Part shown: in pieces, positions 36,509-46,602 of the stretch
Layout: every line of letters begins with the position of its first letter
Numbering within the stretch: position 1 is the first letter of the stretch
NCBI GenBank assembly: GCA_020891255.1
Contig: BQFW01000004.1
Location: 2,108,001-2,172,000 of the forward strand
Length of the DNA: 64,000 bases
From: Entomortierella parvispora E1425
Lineage: Eukaryota; Fungi; Mortierellomycota
Direction: 5' to 3'
Program-made: the position numbers and the translations under genes
The notes under the pieces: generated by a model
Database searches by the model: none
The model's input: the letters and a program-made list of their open reading frames with translations, nothing else
Told to the model about the DNA's origin: nothing

Positions 36509-39500
36509 ATGCCCTCTCTTTCCCATGGCCACGGTTACACCGTAGCCGAGTCCTCTTCGTCTGCCACCACCCGCCGTCGAGGATCGTCCTCTTCTTTTTC
36601 TGACGAGAACGTACCGCACCCCCCTTCTTCCGCTCATACCCATACCCACCACACCATCGATACCGGCAACGCTAATGATAGCGGCAACAGCAGTAGCGAC
36701 AAGAACCACAATGGCAGCATTACTAGTAACAGCAACAGCACCAGAAGCATCAACCGGAGCAACAGCGACAACGGTCAGGGTGAAAGGGAAAAGAACTCCT
36801 CTCTTCCCCTTGATCCACAGCGACCATCGCTTTCGACAATTGCTCGGATAAAGTTTTTCTTCCAAGGTCTTCGCAGAAGCTTCCTTGGCCATGACGGCTC
36901 AGGACAAGTGGTGAATGGACATCGTGTGGATCCTTCCTTGCTCCTCGAGTCAAACTACCGTGTCTTGCCTTTGCTCATCGGGTGCATCATTCCCGTAGGT
37001 TTATTTTAGTGCTCTCTTGCTTTATGGCACCAATGAGGTCCAGCGAAGGTCTTTCATTTATCATTTATCATCTTTGCTACTCTGCTTTTGTATGAAGTGC
37101 GAGTGCGCAACTGAAAACGATGACTGATATAACCGCACCTTGTTGCCTTGTCACTCATTAATCCCCCTATCCCCCCTCACGCGCGCCATCTTTTCTCCGA
37201 GTAGGTATCCATCCTCATCAATGTGCCGTCGATTACCTCGCCGTGGGTCGGAATCCCTGTGTAAGAACTTTTTTCATTTTTTTCATTTTTCTATTTTTGC
37301 TGTCTTTAAAGCTGCTCTCCTGCTGCTGTTTGATTTGCTTGGATCTTCTGTCGCTTTAATTGCCTCTCGGCAAGGCGCAAAGGCGGATAAACATCGCAAG
37401 GGGTTTCTGCGGAACTACAAATCAGCACGCCTCTTTGTCACACAAGATAACCAGTCCTGGGACTTTCAAATTGTTCCAATCTGACCACGACCTCACCCTT
37501 ACCATTTATTATCCCTGTGTTTAGAAATGGAACTGGCCAGGACTATGATGACGACGATCCCAAAGTGGTTCCTATTCCTCATTGGCTCGACTGCATGATT
37601 ATCCTTGCGCTGGTCATGGCCATTATTTGTAATATCTGTGTGCTCTTTCGCTTCCTGGAGCGTCATGTGTGGCACAGCGTCATTCTTAGTCTCATCACCG
37701 CTACGCTGCAAGATATTCTCTGTATCGGTTCGATCGTCCCTTTCTGTATCCTCTATCCGCCCTCCAAGGGCTATGTCTACCTAGAAGGATTTTGGACAAT
37801 GATCGCGTCCATGGTGTTTTCTCTTACGGCGACGGTGCTCATGTCTATAGACTTTCATCGGACGCCTCAGTTTCGATTACAGGGCTCTGGAGTGACCCAC
37901 AAGCAGCGGATCCTGATTGCGGAAGCCATGTCGCTCTGCTTCTATCTCGCCATTGGAGCGCTGATCTTCATCTACCTTGAACACTGGAGTTTTCTAGACG
38001 CGCTGTAAGTATTTTTCTGATCCAATTCTCTCGCCTTTGAAATAGCACCGAGTCATTGTACTCATGACTGTCATCACCCATGGTTAGGTTTTTTGTCATG
38101 GTTACCATCACGACCATTGGCTTTGGTGATAGAGTGCCTGAAACCACAGGCGGACGCGTCTTTGTTATCTTTTACGGCGCAGGAGGCATCGTTCTGCTCG
38201 CAATGGCCGTGAATGCCATCCGTTATGTGATTTTAGAGGATCTCCATCGTCGATTCGCCATTCGAGCTAAAGAACGAAAGGCTAAACGGGATGCGAGACG
38301 TCAAGAGAGAAGGGAGCAACGCGCTATCCAGGAAGAACGGAGACAGCGCTTGTTAGAAGTCTTGGAACGCTTTCAGCAGTTGGAGTCGACCCCTATCACC
38401 AACAGCCCCAACGAGTCGCACGGCGGCTCCCACTATTTTACCCATACTCCTCGACAGTTCACCTTTCCTCATGGACAGCCGTCAAAACTACTGTCAATGT
38501 TCTCTCGAACCCAGACCAAAGATATTGCCGACTCTGGACATGGTGTAGGGTCTGATCTAACTCTTGAAGGTGGTCAACAACCCGCGACTTTCCAAAGGAC
38601 CAACTCAGGCACAAATAACCTCCAAAAGGCACTTGAAGAGCTTCAGCTATCCAGGAATGGCATCACAGCCGACGATTACCAACGCGCGCTGGAGGGCGTT
38701 GGTGGCGAAGACTCGACGAGTCTGGAACTATTGCGCCTCGCGACGATGGAACCACACCAATTTCAGGCTCTAGGCAAACCCTCGCTATTCAAGCGCCTGA
38801 TGGCCTATCGAAGAGGGTCCGATGTTGAACCACCCATCCAGAATCCTACAGCGGAAGAACAGCGCGAAGCCGACAAGAGGCAGGCCTATGTGGAGAGTAT
38901 GCAGGAATACCGGCGACGGCTCCGTTTCAGTGCAGCCATGTTTTTGACTTTCTGGCTTGCTGGGGCAGTCATTTTTACGTTTGTGGAAAGCTGGAACTTT
39001 GGGGACTCAGTCTACTTTGTGTTTATTGCCTTTTCGACAATCGGCTATGGAGATTTTGTACCACGGACCATGGCTGGAAAAGCCATCTTTTTGGCATACT
39101 GTTTGGTCGGAGTCGTTGCGTTGACCTCCCTCGCTTCACTTATCTCTGAGGTCCTCAGCAAGACTATGAGGAAACACGTGGTTGAGACACAACTTCGGCG
39201 AACAGAGCGCATCGAGGCATTGGAGGGAGACCATGAACTAGGAGAAAACAATGACGGGGACCAAGATCTCGAGCAAGGAGCAACGGTGGACTCCTTTACC
39301 GAAGATGGGGGTATTCGAGAAGGATCAGAGGAACTGGACAACGCTGCTAGGACTCAGAGTGACGGCAATGAGACGCCACCGACGCCGAATACCTGCCAGG
39401 GCAGTCTTGAGAATCTGGTTAAAATCTCCAAGGATTTTGATCAACTGTTGCAAAAAGTCCTCGGGCTTGACTCTAATGAAGATGAGAATCAGTCATCAGC

Positions 39501-40902
39501 TGCAGATACAACAACACCTCCACCACTCTCAACCCCTGGAGCCATCGTGGAGTACTTGGAAAAGGAAGAAGATGATGAGATGATGCCGTCTTTTTTGAGT
39601 CCATCCATCTCGCGAGATATCAACTCTACGAGTACGATCCATCAACATACTGCTCGACCTTCACTTCCTGGACATGGCCGCAGACATTCAGTGGACCCGC
39701 GTGGGGGAACTTTCCACAACTTTGGATCTTCCTCACCTAATGATAGCACTCAGATCCAGATCAAGGCATGGCCTACCTCTATCTCTTCGCACGTTAACCT
39801 GGGATCAGAGAGAAACTCGGCAAGTCCCTCACCAGTTCCGTCACTGCCAGCCGCAAGTACTGGCTCTGCTCGTCGACAGAATAAGGACGGGTCCATAACG
39901 ATTGCGGCTCTCCACTGGCAAAATTTGATTTCGTACGCCAAACAACTCAAGGCCTTGACAGCGGCATGTGAAGACGCCATGGAGCGCGTTGCGGCCTGGG
40001 AGGTGTCGGAAAGTAAGCTCCGCCAGAAACGGCGTCAAGCTCGAATGAGGCAGAAGCGACTCTTGAATGAACGACGACGGAGATTGAATGAACTCGGAAC
40101 CCGTGGAACGGCGGATGTTGAGATCGACCAGGAGGACGAGCTGGAGGAACTGGATGAATGGGATGAGGAAGGAAGCGATGCAGATGAGGATGATGAAATT
40201 CTGGATAGACATCGTGTCAAGATTACAGCGGCTTTGTTGGGATCTAAAAGCCCAAAGAAGAGTCGTAGTCGACATTCGAGTCGGCATCCAAGTCGGAATA
40301 CAAGCCGTCGGACAAGCCTCCAGGGAGGTATGGATCCCAACTTTTTACAGCCGCCCCCACCACCAATGGCATTGTCGCTCCACCTGCGTGCCAGGAACCC
40401 GAGTTTAGATGACAGATCGGGACACCTGGGCCAACCAACAAGCCGAGCAAGAGAGCGCAATCGTCCTTCGCATCACCAACACTCACGCCGTGATAGTCAT
40501 CCTCATCAACACACCGTGGTGCATCATTCTGCACACGTTGGCCATTCTACAAGAGGTCACCGCCCAGTCAACCATAGTCGTCACGATCATGGACAACATA
40601 CTGATGCATTGAGCGATCATACAGATAAGATGGGGCTGATTCGACCATTCCAATTATCGCCTTTGCAGACCAATATGAGCGGCCTCCCACCTTCGTCTTC
40701 ATCTCCGGAACAGCCAACAGAACCTAGGATAACTTTCATGGCTGCATCACCCCACCCTCTGGATCGCGATGAACCATCCTTCAGCTTAGGTTCGGGCGTC
40801 GGCCCCTCAAAGACCACGCGGTCACCACTTGGCCACCTCTTCTTTCCTGTCCCGGACGCGGCACTCCATGTCTCCACGCCAGGGTCCACTTCAGAAGGAT
40901 AG
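36509..40902 (+). CDS. TOK1: Outward-rectifying two-pore K+ channel TOK1; exons about 36509-36996, 37205-37260, 37525-38004, 38089-40902
   Basis: Two pore loops, TITTIGFGDRVP and AFSTIGYGDFVP, preceded by four extra N-terminal TM segments; splice phases reconcile. Confidence 0.95.
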
Positions 40903-41116: not shown

Positions 41117-43296
41117 ATGTCATCTCACGCAGCAGAGAACGCCTCTAATGAGGCCAGGGATCCCGCCTACTTTGGCTACTACGCCATGCTGCAACATCAG
41201 GTACATTTACTATCCGGACCAGATCTCAGCATGCTCGCCGAGGAATGACCTCCATGCGACCCAAGTGGATCACGACCTTCCCCATAATTGCCATCCAAAG
41301 CACAACCTTCCAAGACTCAACCCCCTAGTCCTTCATCTCTCTTTTTTCCACGCTGTACGCTCTGGGACCTTTGTGTCCTTCAGAAAGAAGGGAGAAAAGA
41401 GAGATAACAGGATCAAGAAATCGTAGTTATTATTTGTGTCTGAAGAAATCCTAACCTACCCCTTCTTTTTTTTTTTTTGTGTGTGTATGTGTGTGTGTGT
41501 GTTTTTCTTTGATAATCGATGAATAGCAAAACATGCTCCAGGACACGGTCAGGACGTCAACATATCGATCTGCCATCTTGTTGAACACGGAATGTTTTGA
41601 GGACAAGCTCGTCATGGATGTCGGCGCTGGTAAAAGAAAACCTCCGTTCAATGAAGAAATGAGAACAAGCTCAGTCCGAGGAGATCTGGAAATGAGACTA
41701 AAAGGAATCGATATCCTATCTGCTTTATCTTTCTTATACAGGTTCGGGCATTCTCTCTTATTTCGCTGTGCAGGCTGGAGCAAAGAAGGTCTACGCTGTC
41801 GAGGCCTCTGAGATGGCTACCAAGATGAAGAAGCTGGTCCAGGCTGCGTCCTTGCCCGATGGCAGAGCCAAGAACGAGTTCTTGAAGGATAAGGTCGAAG
41901 TTATTCAGTGTAAGCAGAGATCCTGGTCTTGTTTCTTTTTTTTACGGTAATAACTTGTGGGATGGATGACTGACCCTTTGCTGCCATGCTGTTAGCCAAG
42001 ATTGAGGACCCCAGTGTCAAGGCGCCCATGGTGGACACGATCATTTCAGAGCCAATTGGTAAGGGCGACGATTCTTGGTCAGGACTTATGGATAGACCGA
42101 TGTAGTGATACAGGATACTAATCCAACATTGGAACCAACTTATGTAACATCCCCGTAGGTGTCTTGCTTGTTCATGAGAGAATGGTATGGACAGGACAGA
42201 GATAATTTCAATGACACAGAGTTGGGACGATGGACCGTTGAAACCTGGAAAACGACACCAACCATCTTGCTGTGTACTCATTCTTCAATTTATGTGTGAC
42301 ACTAGATTGAGAGCTTTATCTATGCCCGCGACAAGTTTTTGAAGCCCGGTGGACACCTCTTCCCCAACAAAGGAACCATGTTCTTGGCTCCTTTCACTGA
42401 TGCTTTGCTCTTCACTGAGACGATGGGCAAGGCTCGATTCTGGGAACAAGACTCGTTCCACGGTGTCGACCTCACCCCTCTTTATCCCGACGCAAAGACC
42501 GAGATGTTTGGTACGTGCCGTTGACCTCTGTCGAAAAATATCCTCAGTCTCGTCACCAAAAAAAAAACAAGGGAACTGCATTGACCGATTGAGTTCTGCG
42601 CTCTTTATTTTTTTTATAGGCATGCCCGTGGTAGGACACTTTGATCCCAAGTCACTCTTGGCGACTCCCACGGCCGATATTGATGGATATGAAATGGACT
42701 TCAACACCATCACAATGAAGGCGCTCAGGGATTTCGTGGTCCCAATCACATGGAAGGCTCAGTACACTGGATTGATGCATGGAGTTGCAGGATGGTTCGA
42801 TTTGACCTTCTCTGGTAACCCCGAGTCTGAGGCCAGTCAGCCTATTGAGATGTCGACAGGACCCAGTGCGGAAAAGACACATTGGCAGCAAGTTCGCTTC
42901 CTGTTCCGCGAGCCCTTGGCAGTGAATGCAGGACAGAATATCCGCGGTTGGATGCACTGTGTTGTGAACGACATGCGGTCCTACACTGTCGATATTGAGG
43001 TCATTGTTGGAAACTACGGAGAGCTCTCGGATCCCAGCGAGCCCTTTGAGCCTCTGTTGGAGAAGCAAGCCAGCGCTCAATCAACTCGGAGAGGAGATCA
43101 AGATGAGGAGACTTTGGAAGACGAGGAGGATGATTTACAATTCTTGAGACGGAGAGGTCGCTGGGAGTTGCATGAGCAAAGCTACAACTACTCTTACACG
43201 GGAACGAACGATTTGTTGACCAAACCTGAGCACTTGTGCATGTATGAACCCGAGAATGTGGACGACGCCTACGGAGGCATCGCTTATACCAATTAA
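41117..43296 (+). CDS. CARM1: Protein arginine methyltransferase, CARM1/PRMT4-like, 7 exons
   Basis: [56 protein letters not shown]...[16 protein letters not shown] and the THWQQVRFL loop parallel metazoan CARM1. Confidence 0.88.
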
Positions 43297-43553
43297 GAGA
43301 GTTGTTTTTTTCCCCTCGATTTGTTTTTTCCCCCTGTCCTTTTCATCGCTTTCTCATGAAACTTTTTGTCTTTGTGCGTTGCCCTTTTGACTTCTTTTAT
43401 TTTCCTACTTCATTTATCTTTCTTCATGGGTCAACCAACCCATCCTCCTCTATTTGCATTCATTAAAATGACCATTGGACTGCAGAAATGGAGAAGAACT
43501 TGCGAGAAATGACTCTATGGCTAGAAAACGTTGGCTCACGACTGGTCCCTGCT

Positions 43554-45462
43554 CTACTTTTTTCCAGTGTTGGAATATTGGAGGAGAGTATCGCGGGTGC
43601 GGACTGCGTCTTCCATTAAGATTGTAAAAAACTGTCCTAGGGTCAATCCAGACGACTTCAGAATCTAGAGCGGTTGGGCAACACACAAAAAAGGTAATAT
43701 CAGGGTCTGGAGAGTCAAATGATATCAAAAGCCCTATTTCCTCGGGGTCTATCTTACCTTTCCCATGGCACAGTCATCGTCATCGTCAATTGAACAATTG
43801 GCTAAGTAAAAACAAATATAGGAAACAAGGTGTCAGCTGTTGGAATCTCATCCATCTCCAAAAGAAAAATACGCCATGATCCTCTTACTATAGCTTTTTT
43901 TTTAGGACTTACCATTGACATCCACGACGTACACCTTTCCCGTCCGATGATCCTCTCTCAAATCCATCCGACAATATCCGTTTCCACCAAAGGAAGAGTA
44001 GATTGCCTCTGCCTGAGCCTGCAATCTCGTCTGATCCTCGTCGGAGCATACTTGCATCCACCATGAAGCAGTCGCCACCGTGGCATCCGATCCGTAATTG
44101 TTATCGCCCCATTTCATATCATGAGTCAACATGCGCTCACGCTCGGGGATCTTGTCTCGGAACACGCGTTCCAACACTTTGTATACACGAATACCTGTGG
44201 CCTCTGAACCCGAGACCAGAGCTGTGAACTCGCGACCTAAAAAATAAAAAATAAAAATATGAGCCCAAGAACTGGAACTTTGAGATAGGGATAAGTTGTC
44301 TCTGGGCGTCATAGGAAAACTTTTTCACCTGTGATGTATTCTTCAACATAGACAGGACCCCACACTCTCTTCGTCTCCATGGCCTGAATGTACGCCTCTT
44401 CTGGGGTATCGACGACCGATTTTGACGTGATTCCACGACTTGAGCTTGAATTTGCTGGCTTGACCAATAACGGGAAGGTCAACTTGGCCAGCTGTTCCAT
44501 GACCACTGCCCTATGTGCCATCTCCTGCTCCTCGTCCTCTTCTTCTTCCTCGTCTGCATCCTTCGACTTTGGTGGATCGTCCTCCTCTGGGTTGGCGGAC
44601 ATGTCTGTCAAGGGCTTTGCTCTCGCCTCGTCCTCTTCATGAGAATAGACTTCACAGTAACCTGGGGTCAAGGAATGAGACGCCACAAGATGGCGTTTAA
44701 TCCTGGCCTTGTCGCTGTCCAGGTAATACAACTTGGAGTCTGCTCCTGTAAAGGCCAGGTGACGACGCTCTAATCCTCGAATGACTGTGATCCCGGGCCA
44801 ACCATCCGTTTCCATTCCGTCCGTGAAATTGAGTACCACAGTTCGAACGTACTGCGTCGCAGGGTCGGCGAGGAGGGCTTGAGAGGACTTTTGAACGCTA
44901 TTGAGAACCCTCTCGGCAGAATCCAGAGTGATGTAGTGCCAGGTGTATTGAAGAACGTTGGGGATGCTGTCTACAGCACATTTGATACTCTACGCAGGGA
45001 AATAAGGAATAGAAAAAAAAAAGAATGAGTCAAAGCTTGTCTGTTTCGTTTAGCATCTGCGAACACACACATTCCTGCTGTTTCTGTCAACAAAGACAAA
45101 AAAGGAAGAGTTCTTTTTTTCAGCTTTTACCAAACGCGCTTCCGGGGTCCATTCGGTCGCCATCCTTTGTCCGTCATCCAAGGTCCCAATAAAGTAAGAG
45201 TCGTCATGCTCGATATCGTCCTTTTCTACGTCTATGTCCTTGACTAAAGCGCACGGCGCAAAGACTAAAGAGAGAGAGAGAGGAGGTAGACATGACATAC
45301 GTTAGCGACTGAAAATCCTCCTCCGCGAAAGGCAAAGCCTGCGGGTTGGTGGACAACGTCATTGCTCTTTGGTCCTTTTGAGATTTTTTTACCATGGATA
45401 CTCCAGGTCGAACCCTGACCTCCCGTTGTCGCGTGAGGCTCTTTCTCCGCGCTAGGCGTCAT
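43554..45462 (-). CDS. ATP-grasp ligase, D-Ala-D-Ala ligase-like, multi-exon
   Basis: Spliced reading WSIHVFAP...NFTDGMETDGWPG...FTGAD...DSDKA...LLVKPANSSSSRGI...VYVEEYITGREFT...GYCRMDLR...YVVDVNANCS...MGKILKSSGLTLGQFF; five GT-AG introns inferred. Confidence 0.85.
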
Positions 45463-46260
45463 GCCTTCTGCTCTCTATCCTTTATTCCTTTATTCTTTCG
45501 GAGGCAAGGGGAAGGCTGGAAGTGCGCTGCAGTCGCTTCCAATGCTAACGAGTCGAGATGAATGTAATGTCAATGAGCAAGCTGAATGAAGAGGGATGTG
45601 AATGGGCTTCAGGAGGAATGGGGGACAAACGAGAAAGAAGAGAAAAAGAGGCCGTGAGGCCTTTTCCCTCATTTTCTGGCCCTTTTGTCACCTCGCTGCC
45701 CCATCCGCGTGTGCGTTTGTCTGTCTGTCCAATTACACGAAATTCTGGGCAGCCACATAAATGGGGATTCCCACTTGACCTGGTCCGGTCCACAGCTGCT
45801 GAGGCAGCGCACGCGCACATTCGCGCTTGTTCGAACCTCAAACTTGCGTTTTTGTTCTCTTTTTCTTTGGAGCCACGTTGCTGAGAGAGAACCACCAGGG
45901 AAGTAACACGATGCAGGGTCCTTTTCCTTCCTGCATTCATTCTTCTTTTACTCAAGACACCACCTCTTCTGTCCCGAATTCAGCTTTTTTTTTTTTTTTT
46001 TTTTGTTACAAACAACCATTGACAAGTGTTTTTATTCGTTTTTTCATGTCGTTGTTTTCTTATTTTCAGGGAGCAAACGAAAGTACAATTATTGTAAGAA
46101 AGAGGGTGAAGGGGGGGGAATAGATAACAGTGCTTTTTTTGGTCCCAAGCGTTTCGTGTATATTCAAGGATAGATACAATCTCGCAGACCTAGGATTACA
46201 ATGTACTTTTTTTTTAAAATTGGAATCTGCGAGTTGGAGAAACTGAAGGGTCTCCCCGCT

Positions 46261-46602
46261 TTACAAGAACTGGGCAAGGGCGACAGCACCACCTCCGAGA
46301 GCCAAGATGGCCTTTGCGGGGGCGTTCATGTTTCCGGCGTTGGGCTTGCTGGTAGGCGAGGGAGAAGTGCCGGCGGTGGTGGTCGAGGGAATGCTGACGA
46401 TGGTGGTGGTCGCTGGGATGGTAGTCGCGGGGATGGTGGTCGCAGGGATGGTGGTTGCGGGGATTGGGATCGGGATCGTCACGGTGGCAGTGGAAGAGGC
46501 AGAGGCAGAGGCGGAACCACCGGCAGCAGAGGAAGAGGGCTTGGCAGCAGAGGTAACGGCCATGATGGCAGCGATGACAATGGAGGTAGCAGTGAACTTC
46601 AT
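46261..46602 (-). CDS. Small secreted S/T/A-rich, probably GPI-anchored protein, 113 aa
   Basis: Signal peptide MKFTATSIVIAAIMAVTSA, (IPATT)x4, hydrophobic C-terminus; TATAAAAG on minus at about 46708-46715. Confidence 0.8.
   Translation of the reverse strand: MKFTATSIVIAAIMAVTSAAKPSSSAAGGSASASASSTATVTIPIPIPATTIPATTIPATTIPATTTIVSIPSTTTAGTSPSPTSKPNAGNMNAPAKAILALGGGAVALAQFL
46405..46464 (-). repeat. 15-bp coding tandem repeat x4 (IPATT)
   Basis: Plus-strand units GGTGGTCGCTGGGAT, GGTAGTCGCGGGGAT, GGTGGTCGCAGGGAT, GGTGGTTGCGGGGAT. Confidence 0.9.

What the first reader, a model, noticed from the sequence alone, without database searches (positions are those of the whole stretch)
43554..45462. 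Bacterial-type D-Ala-D-Ala-ligase-like ATP-grasp enzyme in a fungus
The ATP-binding motifs of the Ddl fold are present (DK, VKP..SSS.GI, EEYITGREFT, RxD), but the D-Ala-binding HGxxGEDG motif is replaced by NFTDGMETDGWPG and the metal-binding ExN reads DVN. Fungi lack peptidoglycan, so this is probably a ligase for another substrate (small peptide, D-amino acid or protein modification). Five introns show long residence in the nuclear genome. An origin by ancient horizontal transfer is a hypothesis.
Basis: partly seen in the sequence, partly recalled or inferred. Interest (0 to 1): 0.7.

Follow-up and report, generated by a model that had tools for sequence, protein, structure and literature searches.

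The report
Fungal Ddl-like ATP-grasp ligase gene
A soil fungus of the Mortierella group carries an intact, conserved six-exon gene for an enzyme shaped like the bacterial cell-wall enzyme D-Ala-D-Ala ligase; it belongs to an unstudied, eukaryote-only branch of that enzyme family found in early-diverging fungi, and its substrate is unknown.

Summary
A minus-strand gene at 45462..43554 has six exons and five GT..AG introns and encodes 447 aa.

- **Fold:** profile and structure comparisons put the protein closest to D-Ala-D-Ala ligases (profile E 3e-34; VIA-align Z 24-28 over the whole three-domain fold).
- **Not a true Ddl:** it scores 48-75 bits against NCBIfam cut-offs of 243 or more. By alignment to E. 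coli DdlB, H63 becomes D, Y216 becomes W, S281 becomes C and E270 becomes D. The ATP, Mg and phosphoryl-transfer residues are kept.
- **Not "bacterial-type" by descent:** it sits in a strongly supported clade (A). Every member whose source could be identified is eukaryotic or from a giant virus: all Mortierellomycotina, a chytrid, Olpidium, an aphelid and protist contigs.
- **Paralogue and bacterial kin:** a second clade (B1) spans Mortierellomycotina, chytrids, Blastocladiomycota and the aphelid. Bacterial relatives (25-33% identity) form a separate clade (B2).
- **Long residence:** synteny and intron positions are conserved across Mortierellomycotina, and selection is purifying.

An ancient transfer from bacteria is neither shown nor excluded. 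A recent one is not supported.

The function is unknown. It is most likely an active ATP-dependent amide-bond ligase acting on a substrate other than D-Ala-D-Ala.

An unchecked note from this scan (s1-201138) reports another Ddl-like gene elsewhere in this genome. The joined protein was never searched.

The parts
43554..45462 (-). Whole gene: six exons, five introns, 447-codon CDS for a Ddl-like ATP-grasp protein.
   Evidence: Collinear with orthologue P0171. tblastn of orthologues hits exons 2-6.
45393..45462 (-). Exon 1 (MTPS...WSIH, ending in phase 1). The poorly conserved N-terminus and the start of the first beta-strand.
   Evidence: The donor GTAAAA at 45392 restores ...WSIH-V-FAPCALVKD, as in orthologue P0002 (WSVHVFASYALVKD). 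L. zychae has an intron at the same position.
45131..45264 (-). Exon 2. N-terminal domain with the invariant clade motif ATEW (45160-45149). Its Glu is the likely counterpart of DdlB Glu15.
   Evidence: E and W are invariant in clade A. MAFFT aligns this Glu with DdlB E15. In the model the Glu sits between a strand and a helix, as E15 does in Ddl as I recall it (inference).
44329..44989 (-). Exon 3. Rest of the N-domain (WHY; DGMETDGWPG at 44821-44792 in place of the Ddl HGxxGEDG loop), DSDK, an acidic low-complexity insert, then LLVKP/SSSSRG and VEEYI of the ATP-grasp core.
   Evidence: Pfam PF07478, 23 bits, residues 154-218. Alignment to DdlB. Motif coordinates.
43913..44236 (-). Exon 4. 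REFT; omega-loop region with DMKW (K215 kept, Y216 becomes W; 44120-44109); CRMD (R255, D257; 43973-43962); VDVN (E270 becomes D, N272 kept; 43925-43914).
   Evidence: Purifying selection on this exon.
43758..43801 (-). Exon 5 (A)NCSIDDDDDCAMGK. The family-specific NANC(S/G) signature replaces Ddl NTxPG. Cys stands at the position aligned with DdlB Ser281.
43554..43664 (-). Exon 6. C-terminal helix ILKSSGLTLGQFF...GKK plus the TAG stop.
42349..43296 (+). Last exon of a neighbouring, convergent protein arginine methyltransferase gene (PRMT_C). Context only; the adjacency is conserved in Mortierellomycotina.
   Evidence: Pfam PF22528, 65 bits. The same neighbour is present in L. zychae and A. 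wolfii.

Best explanation
**What it is.** An intact, expressed-looking nuclear gene for a cytosolic ATP-grasp carboxylate-amine ligase. The window's exons themselves were placed in clade A and in the alignments. The fold and full-length family scores come from annotated orthologues used as proxies.

**Where it belongs.** It is a member of a previously undescribed clade of the D-Ala-D-Ala-ligase lineage that contains only eukaryotes and giant viruses ("clade A"; signature W.VHV..P, TEW, WH, DGxETDGWPG, MKW, DVNANCS). The clade has been inherited vertically within Mortierellomycotina. It is also present in a chytrid, Olpidium and an aphelid, so it probably dates to early fungi or earlier.

**How it probably works (inferred).**
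1. The enzyme binds Mg-ATP through the conserved Lys, Glu, Asp and Asn residues.
2. It phosphorylates the carboxylate of a small amino-acid-like substrate to an acyl phosphate, held by the Glu of TEW together with the Ser, Lys and Arg counterparts of DdlB S150, K215 and R255.
3. A second, amine nucleophile attacks and forms an amide bond.

The changed N-domain loop (H63 to D, plus a four-residue WPG insertion), Y216 to W and S281 to C mean the two substrates are not D-Ala + D-Ala. Their identity is unknown.
For: **Gene integrity and constraint.**

**Ddl lineage.**
- The family profile matches Ddl chains at E 3e-34; the next family is PurD-type at about 1e-10.
- The Foldseek top 50 are all Ddl or VanA.
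- The AF2 model of the closest orthologue has pLDDT 92.3.
- VIA-align against 48,161 chains gives Ddl Z 24-28 over model residues 11-435, then LysX/ArgX 20.6 and RimK 19.0.

**Catalytic residues.** Counterparts of DdlB K97, K144, S150/S151, E180, E187, K215, R255, D257 and N272 are kept. E270 becomes D, which is conservative.

**Eukaryotic clade.**
- Clade A has support 100* (SH-aLRT, quick tree) and 100/99* (careful tree). Mortierellomycotina are monophyletic at 100/100*, and the window is sister to Gryganskiella at 100/98*.
- Members named or placed as eukaryotic or viral.
- Only 205 of 1.84 billion representatives match exon 3 at E <= 1e-3.

**Vertical descent.** Shared introns and PRMT/K+-channel synteny.
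Against:
- The substrate inference rests on alignment to DdlB and on textbook roles of its residues. The model coordinates could not be inspected, so the Glu15 equivalence is an inference.
- Several clade A members come from metagenomes or transcriptomes of unknown organisms.
- The order of clades A, B1 and B2 is unresolved (polytomy; AU p 0.16), so the ultimate source, bacterial or eukaryotic, is open.
- Related bacterial genes are fused to SET domains or sit beside peptide exporters. This hints at peptide or protein substrates rather than free amino acids.
Confidence: 0.6

Rival explanations
1. It ligates an amino acid onto a protein or ribosomal peptide, as RimK, LysX/ArgX or TTL enzymes do, rather than making a free small molecule. 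It might act together with the neighbouring arginine methyltransferase.
For: - Wider-family members are fused to SET protein-methyltransferase domains (P0139, P0084, L006 8876-10294).
- A cyanobacterial locus pairs two family genes with a C39-peptidase ABC exporter typical of leader-peptide products.
- LysX/ArgX and RimK are the next-best structural matches (Z 19-20.6).
- The PRMT adjacency is conserved in three Mortierellomycotina genera.
Against: - The SET fusions and exporter loci lie in the bacterial clade B2 or beyond, not in clade A.
- Clade A proteins are single-domain.
- PRMT is not a neighbour in the chytrid, the aphelid or the two protist contigs, so the adjacency may be plain synteny.
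- Ddl matches are clearly better than LysX or RimK (Z 24-28 against 19-20.6).
Confidence: 0.2
2. It is a genuine D-alanine-D-alanine (or D-Ala-D-X) ligase kept by fungi for some non-peptidoglycan use of D-amino-acid dipeptides.
For: - Ddl is the closest family by sequence profile and by structure.
- K215, R255, S150 and a plausible Glu15 counterpart are retained.
- Automatic annotations call relatives D-alanine-D-alanine ligase.
Against: - Scores of 48-75 bits fall far below the NCBIfam Ddl cut-offs of 243-245 bits.
- Pfam Dala_Dala_lig_N does not match.
- H63 becomes D with a loop insertion, Y216 becomes W and S281 becomes C.
- The clade is separated from DdlB by long, well-supported branches.
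Confidence: 0.07
3. It was acquired by horizontal transfer, either from bacteria into an early fungal or opisthokont ancestor, or between giant viruses and their hosts. On this reading the eukaryotic distribution reflects transfer rather than ancient eukaryotic ancestry.
For: - The family is patchy in eukaryotes: no Dikarya or Mucorales names appear among the hits.
- Giant-virus members nest inside clade A (P0192 Fadolivirus, P0016).
- Bacteria (Akkermansiaceae L071) and canonical Ddl lie at the base of the rooted tree.
- The bacterial clade B2 groups with the fungal paralogue B1 (98*).
- B1 also occurs in tardigrades and a bdelloid rotifer.
Against: - No bacterial sequence falls in clade A, and the best prokaryotic identity is 33%.
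- The branching inside clade A is unresolved and so does not contradict the species tree.
- Introns, synteny and saturated synonymous sites show that any transfer predates Mortierellomycotina.
- A single eukaryotic clade A+B1 is not rejected (p-AU 0.16).
Confidence: 0.3
4. It is a MysD-like enzyme of mycosporine-type sunscreen biosynthesis; MysD is a Ddl homologue that adds an amino acid to mycosporine-glycine.
For: Only the general kinship with Ddl, plus the presence of cyanobacterial relatives. The link to MysD comes from my own knowledge, not from a tool result.
Against: - No dehydroquinate-synthase-like, O-methyltransferase or second ATP-grasp gene lies beside it in the window.
- None lies beside the cyanobacterial relatives examined. 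Their loci hold other ATP-grasp genes, PanD, exporters and chemotaxis genes.
- No MysD sequence was available to compare.
Confidence: 0.03

Closest known systems
D-alanine-D-alanine ligase (Ddl; E. coli DdlB, P. aeruginosa DdlA/DdlB, VanA-type ligases)
   Same: - Same three-domain ATP-grasp fold over the whole length (Z 24-28, about 280-306 aligned residues, rmsd about 3 A).
- Best sequence-profile match (E 3e-34).
- Counterparts of K97, K144, S150/S151, E180, E187, K215, R255, D257 and N272 are conserved.
   Different: - 14-20% identity.
- Below every curated Ddl cut-off.
- An extra N-terminal beta-hairpin.
- HGxxGEDG is replaced by DGxETDGWPG.
- Y216 becomes W, E270 becomes D, NTxPG becomes NANCS and S281 becomes C.
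- Mortierellomycotina carry a 40-50 residue acidic insert.
- The hosts are eukaryotes, and fungi have no peptidoglycan (own knowledge).
Paralogous fungal clade B1 (e.g. Benniella KAK3828579.1, Batrachochytrium BATDEDRAFT_33473, Gonapodya, Allomyces AMAG_07945)
   Same: - Same family signature: DGxExDG(Y/W)PG ... (E/D)VNANC(G/S).
- Same hosts: Mortierellomycotina, chytrids and the aphelid.
- Also uncharacterised.
   Different: - A separate clade supported at 98-99*.
- Keeps Glu in EVN.
- Has Tyr or Phe instead of the K215 counterpart.
- Distributed more widely: Blastocladiomycota, tardigrades and a bdelloid rotifer.
Bacterial clade B2 (filamentous cyanobacteria, Saprospiraceae/Lewinellaceae, Acidobacteriota, some Proteobacteria)
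   Same: 25-33% identity from the DGxExDG loop to the C-terminus, with the same EVNANC signature.
   Different: - Usually occurs as two or three tandem paralogues.
- Sits next to further ATP-grasp genes, SET fusions, an M20 peptidase, PanD or exporters.
- Forms a distinct clade (100*).
LysX/ArgX and RimK (amino-acid-to-protein C-terminus ligases)
   Same: Next-best structural neighbours after Ddl (Z 19-20.6). Same acyl-phosphate chemistry (established for ATP-grasp enzymes).
   Different: Clearly lower structural scores. No significant sequence match in the PDB profile search. No carrier-protein gene is nearby.

Membership tests
ATP-grasp superfamily | ATP-grasp fold with two ATP-binding lysines and an Asp/Glu/Asn Mg-binding set. 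| tested here: met
   The fold search is filled with ATP-grasp enzymes. K of DSDK, K of VKP, D of RMD and D/N of DVN align with DdlB K97, K144, D257 and E270/N272.
Pfam PF07478 Dala_Dala_lig_C | Score at or above the gathering cut-off of 24 bits. | tested here: met
   The window's exons score 23.0 and 18.8 bits separately, on consecutive parts of the profile. Full-length orthologues score 57.6-68.1 bits. The joined window protein was not scanned.
D-alanine-D-alanine ligase proper (EC 6.3.2.4; TIGR01205 / PRK01372) | Score above the curated NCBIfam cut-offs. | tested here: not met
   Orthologues score 47.7-75.3 bits against cut-offs of 243-245.65. The window's exons score 20.5 bits or less.
D-alanine-D-alanine ligase proper | N-terminal domain recognised as Dala_Dala_lig_N (PF01820), with the GGxSxE and HGxxGEDG motifs. 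| tested here: not met
   No clade A protein matches PF01820. HGxxGEDG reads DGMETDGWPG. GGxSxE is absent, and only a candidate Glu (in ATEW) remains.
D-alanine-D-alanine ligase proper | Substrate triad and second-site residues (DdlB E15, S150, Y216; S281). | tested here: not met
   The S150 counterpart is kept. Y216 is Trp and S281 is Cys. The E15 equivalence is only inferred.
D-alanine-D-alanine ligase proper | Catalytic activity on D-Ala. | not testable with these tools
   Needs an enzyme assay.
Ddl-like structural group | Best structural neighbours are Ddl chains over all three domains. | tested here: met
   Z 23.8-27.9 for seven Ddl/VanA representatives, spanning model residues 10-437. 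The next family scores Z 20.6. The Foldseek top 50 are all Ddl or VanA. Both models are of orthologues (P0002, P0171), not of the window's joined protein.
Clade A (eukaryotic/NCLDV Ddl-like ligases, defined here) | Signature TEW, WH, DGxETDGWPG, MKW and DVNANCS, plus placement inside the clade. | tested here: met
   The motifs are in the window and in clade members. Exon 3 is placed inside the clade at 100/99*.
MysD-type mycosporine ligases | Clustered with DDGS/EEVS and O-methyltransferase genes. | tested here: not met
   The neighbours are a PRMT, a two-pore K+ channel and a Ser/Thr-rich protein. Sequence kinship to MysD was not tested.

The most novel reading that the evidence does not exclude
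Clade A and its paralogue B1, which co-occur in Mortierellomycotina and the aphelid, would be the two steps of an undescribed ATP-grasp pathway of early-diverging fungi. The pathway would build a small peptide-like metabolite or a peptide tag on proteins. It would echo the tandem ligase operons of their bacterial relatives and would have been lost in Dikarya and Mucorales.
Probability: 0.15. Interest if true: 0.7.

Novelty: new variant of a known kind. Interest (0 to 1): 0.45.

Why it matters
Fungi have no peptidoglycan, yet a whole subphylum, together with zoosporic fungi and an aphelid, keeps two conserved relatives of the peptidoglycan enzyme Ddl under purifying selection. That points to an unknown amide-bond product, either a metabolite or a protein modification, in early-diverging fungi.

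Mortierellomycotina are common soil and root-associated fungi, and some are used industrially (own knowledge). The clade is small, has a clear sequence signature and is easy to express, so the function is directly testable.

The finding also gives a cleaner picture of how the Ddl lineage spread beyond bacteria. It corrects the tempting reading of "bacterial gene in a fungus".

Tried and rejected
1. **Single exons against PDB sequences.** These gave only marginal Ddl hits (E 0.2-0.9). A family profile was needed.
2. **Profile word search with clade A alignment A3.** It returned only three proteins, all already known, and added nothing.
3. **AU test on the 94-row mixture-model tree.** It stalled after four runs. 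I replaced it with a 43-row LG+G4 test, whose limits are stated.
4. **MysD idea.** I checked neighbourhoods in the window and in three cyanobacterial loci and found no support.
5. **Literature.** Six searches found nothing on this family in fungi, giant viruses, tardigrades or rotifers. The 2009 survey of amidoligases (PMC3268129) is not held.
6. **ESM Atlas feature search.** It gave only unnamed bacterial Ddl_C clusters.
7. **P0002 as a structural proxy.** Its annotation skips a conserved segment (IK..V....WHY), which lowers the model's N-domain confidence. I replaced it with P0171.
9. **Joined six-exon protein.** It was never sent to any search, fold or family tool. The exons were searched one by one by reference, and annotated orthologues served as full-length proxies.
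Full report
**The gene.** Reading the minus strand of 43400-45600 in three frames and checking the splice sites gives a six-exon gene:

| Exon | Window coordinates |
|---|---|
| E1 | 45462-45393 |
| E2 | 45264-45131 |
| E3 | 44989-44329 |
| E4 | 44236-43913 |
| E5 | 43801-43758 |
| E6 | 43664-43554 (includes the TAG stop) |

- The CDS is 1344 nt, or 447 codons plus stop.
- All five introns (128, 141, 92, 111 and 93 nt) begin with GT and end with AG.
- The three split codons read GTC, GGT and GCC.
- The annotated orthologue of Gryganskiella cystojenkinii (P0171, 437 aa) is collinear with the model across the junctions E2/E3 to E5/E6, at 84, 78, 84, 93 and 70% identity for exons 2-6.
- tblastn of 15 relatives hits exons 2-6.
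- The exon 1/2 junction rests on matching the L. zychae gene.
- Exons were used by reference, and annotated orthologues served as full-length proxies.

**Is it real and constrained?**
- Pfam Dala_Dala_lig_C matches the two large exons on consecutive parts of the profile (23.0 bits at profile positions 19-80; 18.8 bits at positions 129-173).
- Full-length orthologues score 57.6-68.1 bits against a cut-off of 24.
- For exon 4, compared between the window, Linnemannia zychae and Actinomortierella wolfii, non-synonymous differences are 0.15-0.18 per site and synonymous differences 0.75-0.85, which is saturated. This is an old gene under strong purifying selection.

**What kind of protein?**
- A profile of 56 family members matches Ddl chains in the PDB at E 3e-34. 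The next family (PurD-type) appears at about 1e-10.
- An AlphaFold2 model of the L. zychae orthologue (pLDDT 84) gives only Ddl or VanA among the 50 best Foldseek hits.
- That annotation skips a conserved N-domain segment. I therefore modelled the closest complete orthologue, P0171 (pLDDT 92.3, pTM 0.89).
- VIA-align of that model against 48,161 representative chains puts seven Ddl/VanA entries first: Z 23.8-27.9, 275-306 aligned residues, rmsd 2.8-4.1 A, spanning model residues 10-437. LysX/ArgX follow at 20.6, RimK at 19.0, PylC at 18.3 and DcsG at 17.9.
- The whole three-domain Ddl architecture is therefore present, with an added N-terminal hairpin.

**Residues.** The table comes from the alignment with E. 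coli DdlB, taken from the annotated K-12 record. The roles of the DdlB residues are textbook knowledge, not tested here.

| DdlB residue(s) | Window / clade A |
|---|---|
| K97, K144, S150/S151, E180, E187, K215, R255, D257, N272 | conserved |
| E270 | Asp |
| Y216 | Trp (invariant in clade A) |
| H63 | Asp, within DGMETDGWPG, which also carries a four-residue insertion |
| NTSPG | NANCS |
| S281 | Cys |
| E15 | possibly the invariant Glu of ATEW |

- MAFFT aligns the ATEW Glu with E15, and in the model it lies between a strand and a helix, as E15 does in Ddl as I recall it. This equivalence is an inference.
- The chemistry (ATP, Mg, acyl phosphate) is probably intact, while the substrate sites are different.
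- Curated Ddl models are missed by a wide margin: 48-75 bits against cut-offs of 243-245.

**Relatives and descent.**
- An exhaustive HMMER search of 1.84 billion representatives with exon 3 finds only 205 proteins at E <= 1e-3.
- A word search with the orthologue finds the gene in every sampled genus of Mortierellomycotina: Linnemannia, Mortierella, Podila, Haplosporangium, Dissophora, Entomortierella, Gryganskiella, Benniella, Lunasporangiospora, Actinomortierella and Lobosporangium. Beyond these it finds only Olpidium, a giant virus (Fadolivirus) and cyanobacteria at about 30% identity.
- Name look-ups add Amoeboaphelidium, a EukProt transcriptome and the chytrid Gaertneriomyces.
- Two unnamed members lie on contigs with plainly eukaryotic neighbours: Rrp6, radial-spoke proteins and Vps54 on one; SNF5 and mTOR on the other.

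**Trees.** The 94-row maximum-likelihood tree rooted on canonical Ddl and the careful 37-row tree agree on these groups:

| Clade | Members | Support |
|---|---|---|
| A | Mortierellomycotina, Gaertneriomyces, Olpidium, Amoeboaphelidium, giant viruses, eukaryotic contigs and several unnamed metagenome or transcriptome proteins; no bacterial sequence | 100* and 100/99* |
| B1 | a paralogue in fungi | 98* |
| B2 | bacterial sequences plus unnamed metagenome proteins | 100* |

- Mortierellomycotina are monophyletic within clade A (100/100*), and the window is sister to Gryganskiella (100/98*).
- A search with the Benniella B1 protein shows B1 in all Mortierellomycotina, many Chytridiomycota, Blastocladiomycota, the aphelid and Caulochytrium. 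It also appears in tardigrades and a bdelloid rotifer.
- No Dikarya or Mucorales names appear in either list.
- A motif scan of one genome for each of 185,579 prokaryotic species found 84 relatives, none above 33% identity. All those sampled fall in B2 or at the base of the tree.
- B1 groups with B2 (98*), but a tree that forces all eukaryotic sequences (A+B1) together is not rejected (p-AU 0.16; 43 rows, LG+G4).
- The deep history is therefore open. An ultimately bacterial source is plausible, because Ddl and one Akkermansiaceae sequence lie at the base, but it is not shown.

**Long residence.**
- Intron positions 1-5 are shared with L. zychae and positions 2-4 with A. wolfii. The chytrid has two introns elsewhere, and the aphelid gene is intronless.
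- The order ATP-grasp / PRMT / two-pore K+ channel is the same in the window and in L. zychae. A PRMT fragment also follows the gene in A. wolfii.
- Contamination and recent transfer are excluded.

**Function.** Nothing in the library of papers bears on this family.
- The bacterial relatives occur as two or three tandem paralogues.
- They sit beside further large ATP-grasp genes and aspartate decarboxylase, beside a C39-peptidase ABC exporter, or beside an ATP-grasp-SET fusion and an M20 peptidase. ATP-grasp-SET fusions recur among distant hits.
- This suggests that the wider family builds or decorates peptides, but none of these contexts belongs to clade A.
- My best reading is an active ATP-dependent amide-bond ligase with two small, non-D-Ala/D-Ala substrates. 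A protein or peptide acceptor is the main rival.

**Verdict.** It is wrong to call the gene bacterial-type by descent. The gene is a member of an uncharacterised, eukaryote-centred branch of the Ddl lineage, so it is a new variant of a known kind and of moderate interest.

An unchecked note of this scan (s1-201138) reports another intron-containing Ddl-like gene elsewhere in this genome. That fits the B1 paralogue found in all Mortierellomycotina, but I could not read that locus.

Noticed in passing
window 42349-43296 (+) and 38080-40902 (+): The gene lies tail to tail with a protein arginine methyltransferase (PRMT_C, 65 bits). Beyond that is a two-pore-type K+ channel (Ion_trans_2). The same order is kept in Linnemannia zychae, and a PRMT fragment also follows the gene in Actinomortierella wolfii.
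   Followed up: partly
window 46261-46602 (-): A 113-aa ORF with a signal-like N-terminus, Ser/Ala/Thr/Pro-rich TIPAT repeats and a hydrophobic C-terminus. It looks like a small GPI-anchored or cell-wall mucin-like protein. It has no Pfam match.
   Followed up: no
L090 5001-6227 (Amoeboaphelidium protococcarum): The aphelid orthologue is intronless. It contains 10 in-frame TAA and 8 in-frame TAG codons that the deposited protein reads as Gln, and it ends in TGA. This suggests a variant nuclear code.
   Followed up: partly
L087 7001-9414 (Linnemannia zychae, KAF9903391.1 = P0002): The deposited gene model seems to use a wrong acceptor for exon 3. It lacks the conserved segment (IK.AVD.IPNV...WHY) that is present in the window and in other orthologues. 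This lowers the confidence of a structure model built on it.
   Followed up: partly
L005 7764-10071; L006 7629-10294; L001 and L003 10001-13553: Bacterial relatives sit in tandem arrays of Ddl-like ATP-grasp genes. Beside them are a C39-peptidase ABC exporter (Calothrix), an ATP-grasp-SET fusion with an M20 peptidase (Saprospirales), or two 770-860 aa ATP-grasp_4 proteins, a sigma factor and aspartate decarboxylase (Floridaenema, Coleofasciculus). These look like uncharacterised peptide-building clusters.
   Followed up: partly
proteins P0018, P0029, P0277, P0286: The paralogous clade B1 also has members annotated in tardigrades (Ramazzottius, Paramacrobiotus) and in the bdelloid rotifer Adineta steineri, at 34-43% identity to the Benniella protein. 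These could be transfers into animals or contamination.
   Followed up: no
protein P0027 (JGI metagenome, 1067 aa): A relative with the canonical-like EVNSLPG motif is fused, or mis-joined by gene calling, to an RRM domain, and is named nuclear cap-binding protein subunit 2. P0028 carries a 4HBT thioesterase domain in front of the ligase.
   Followed up: no
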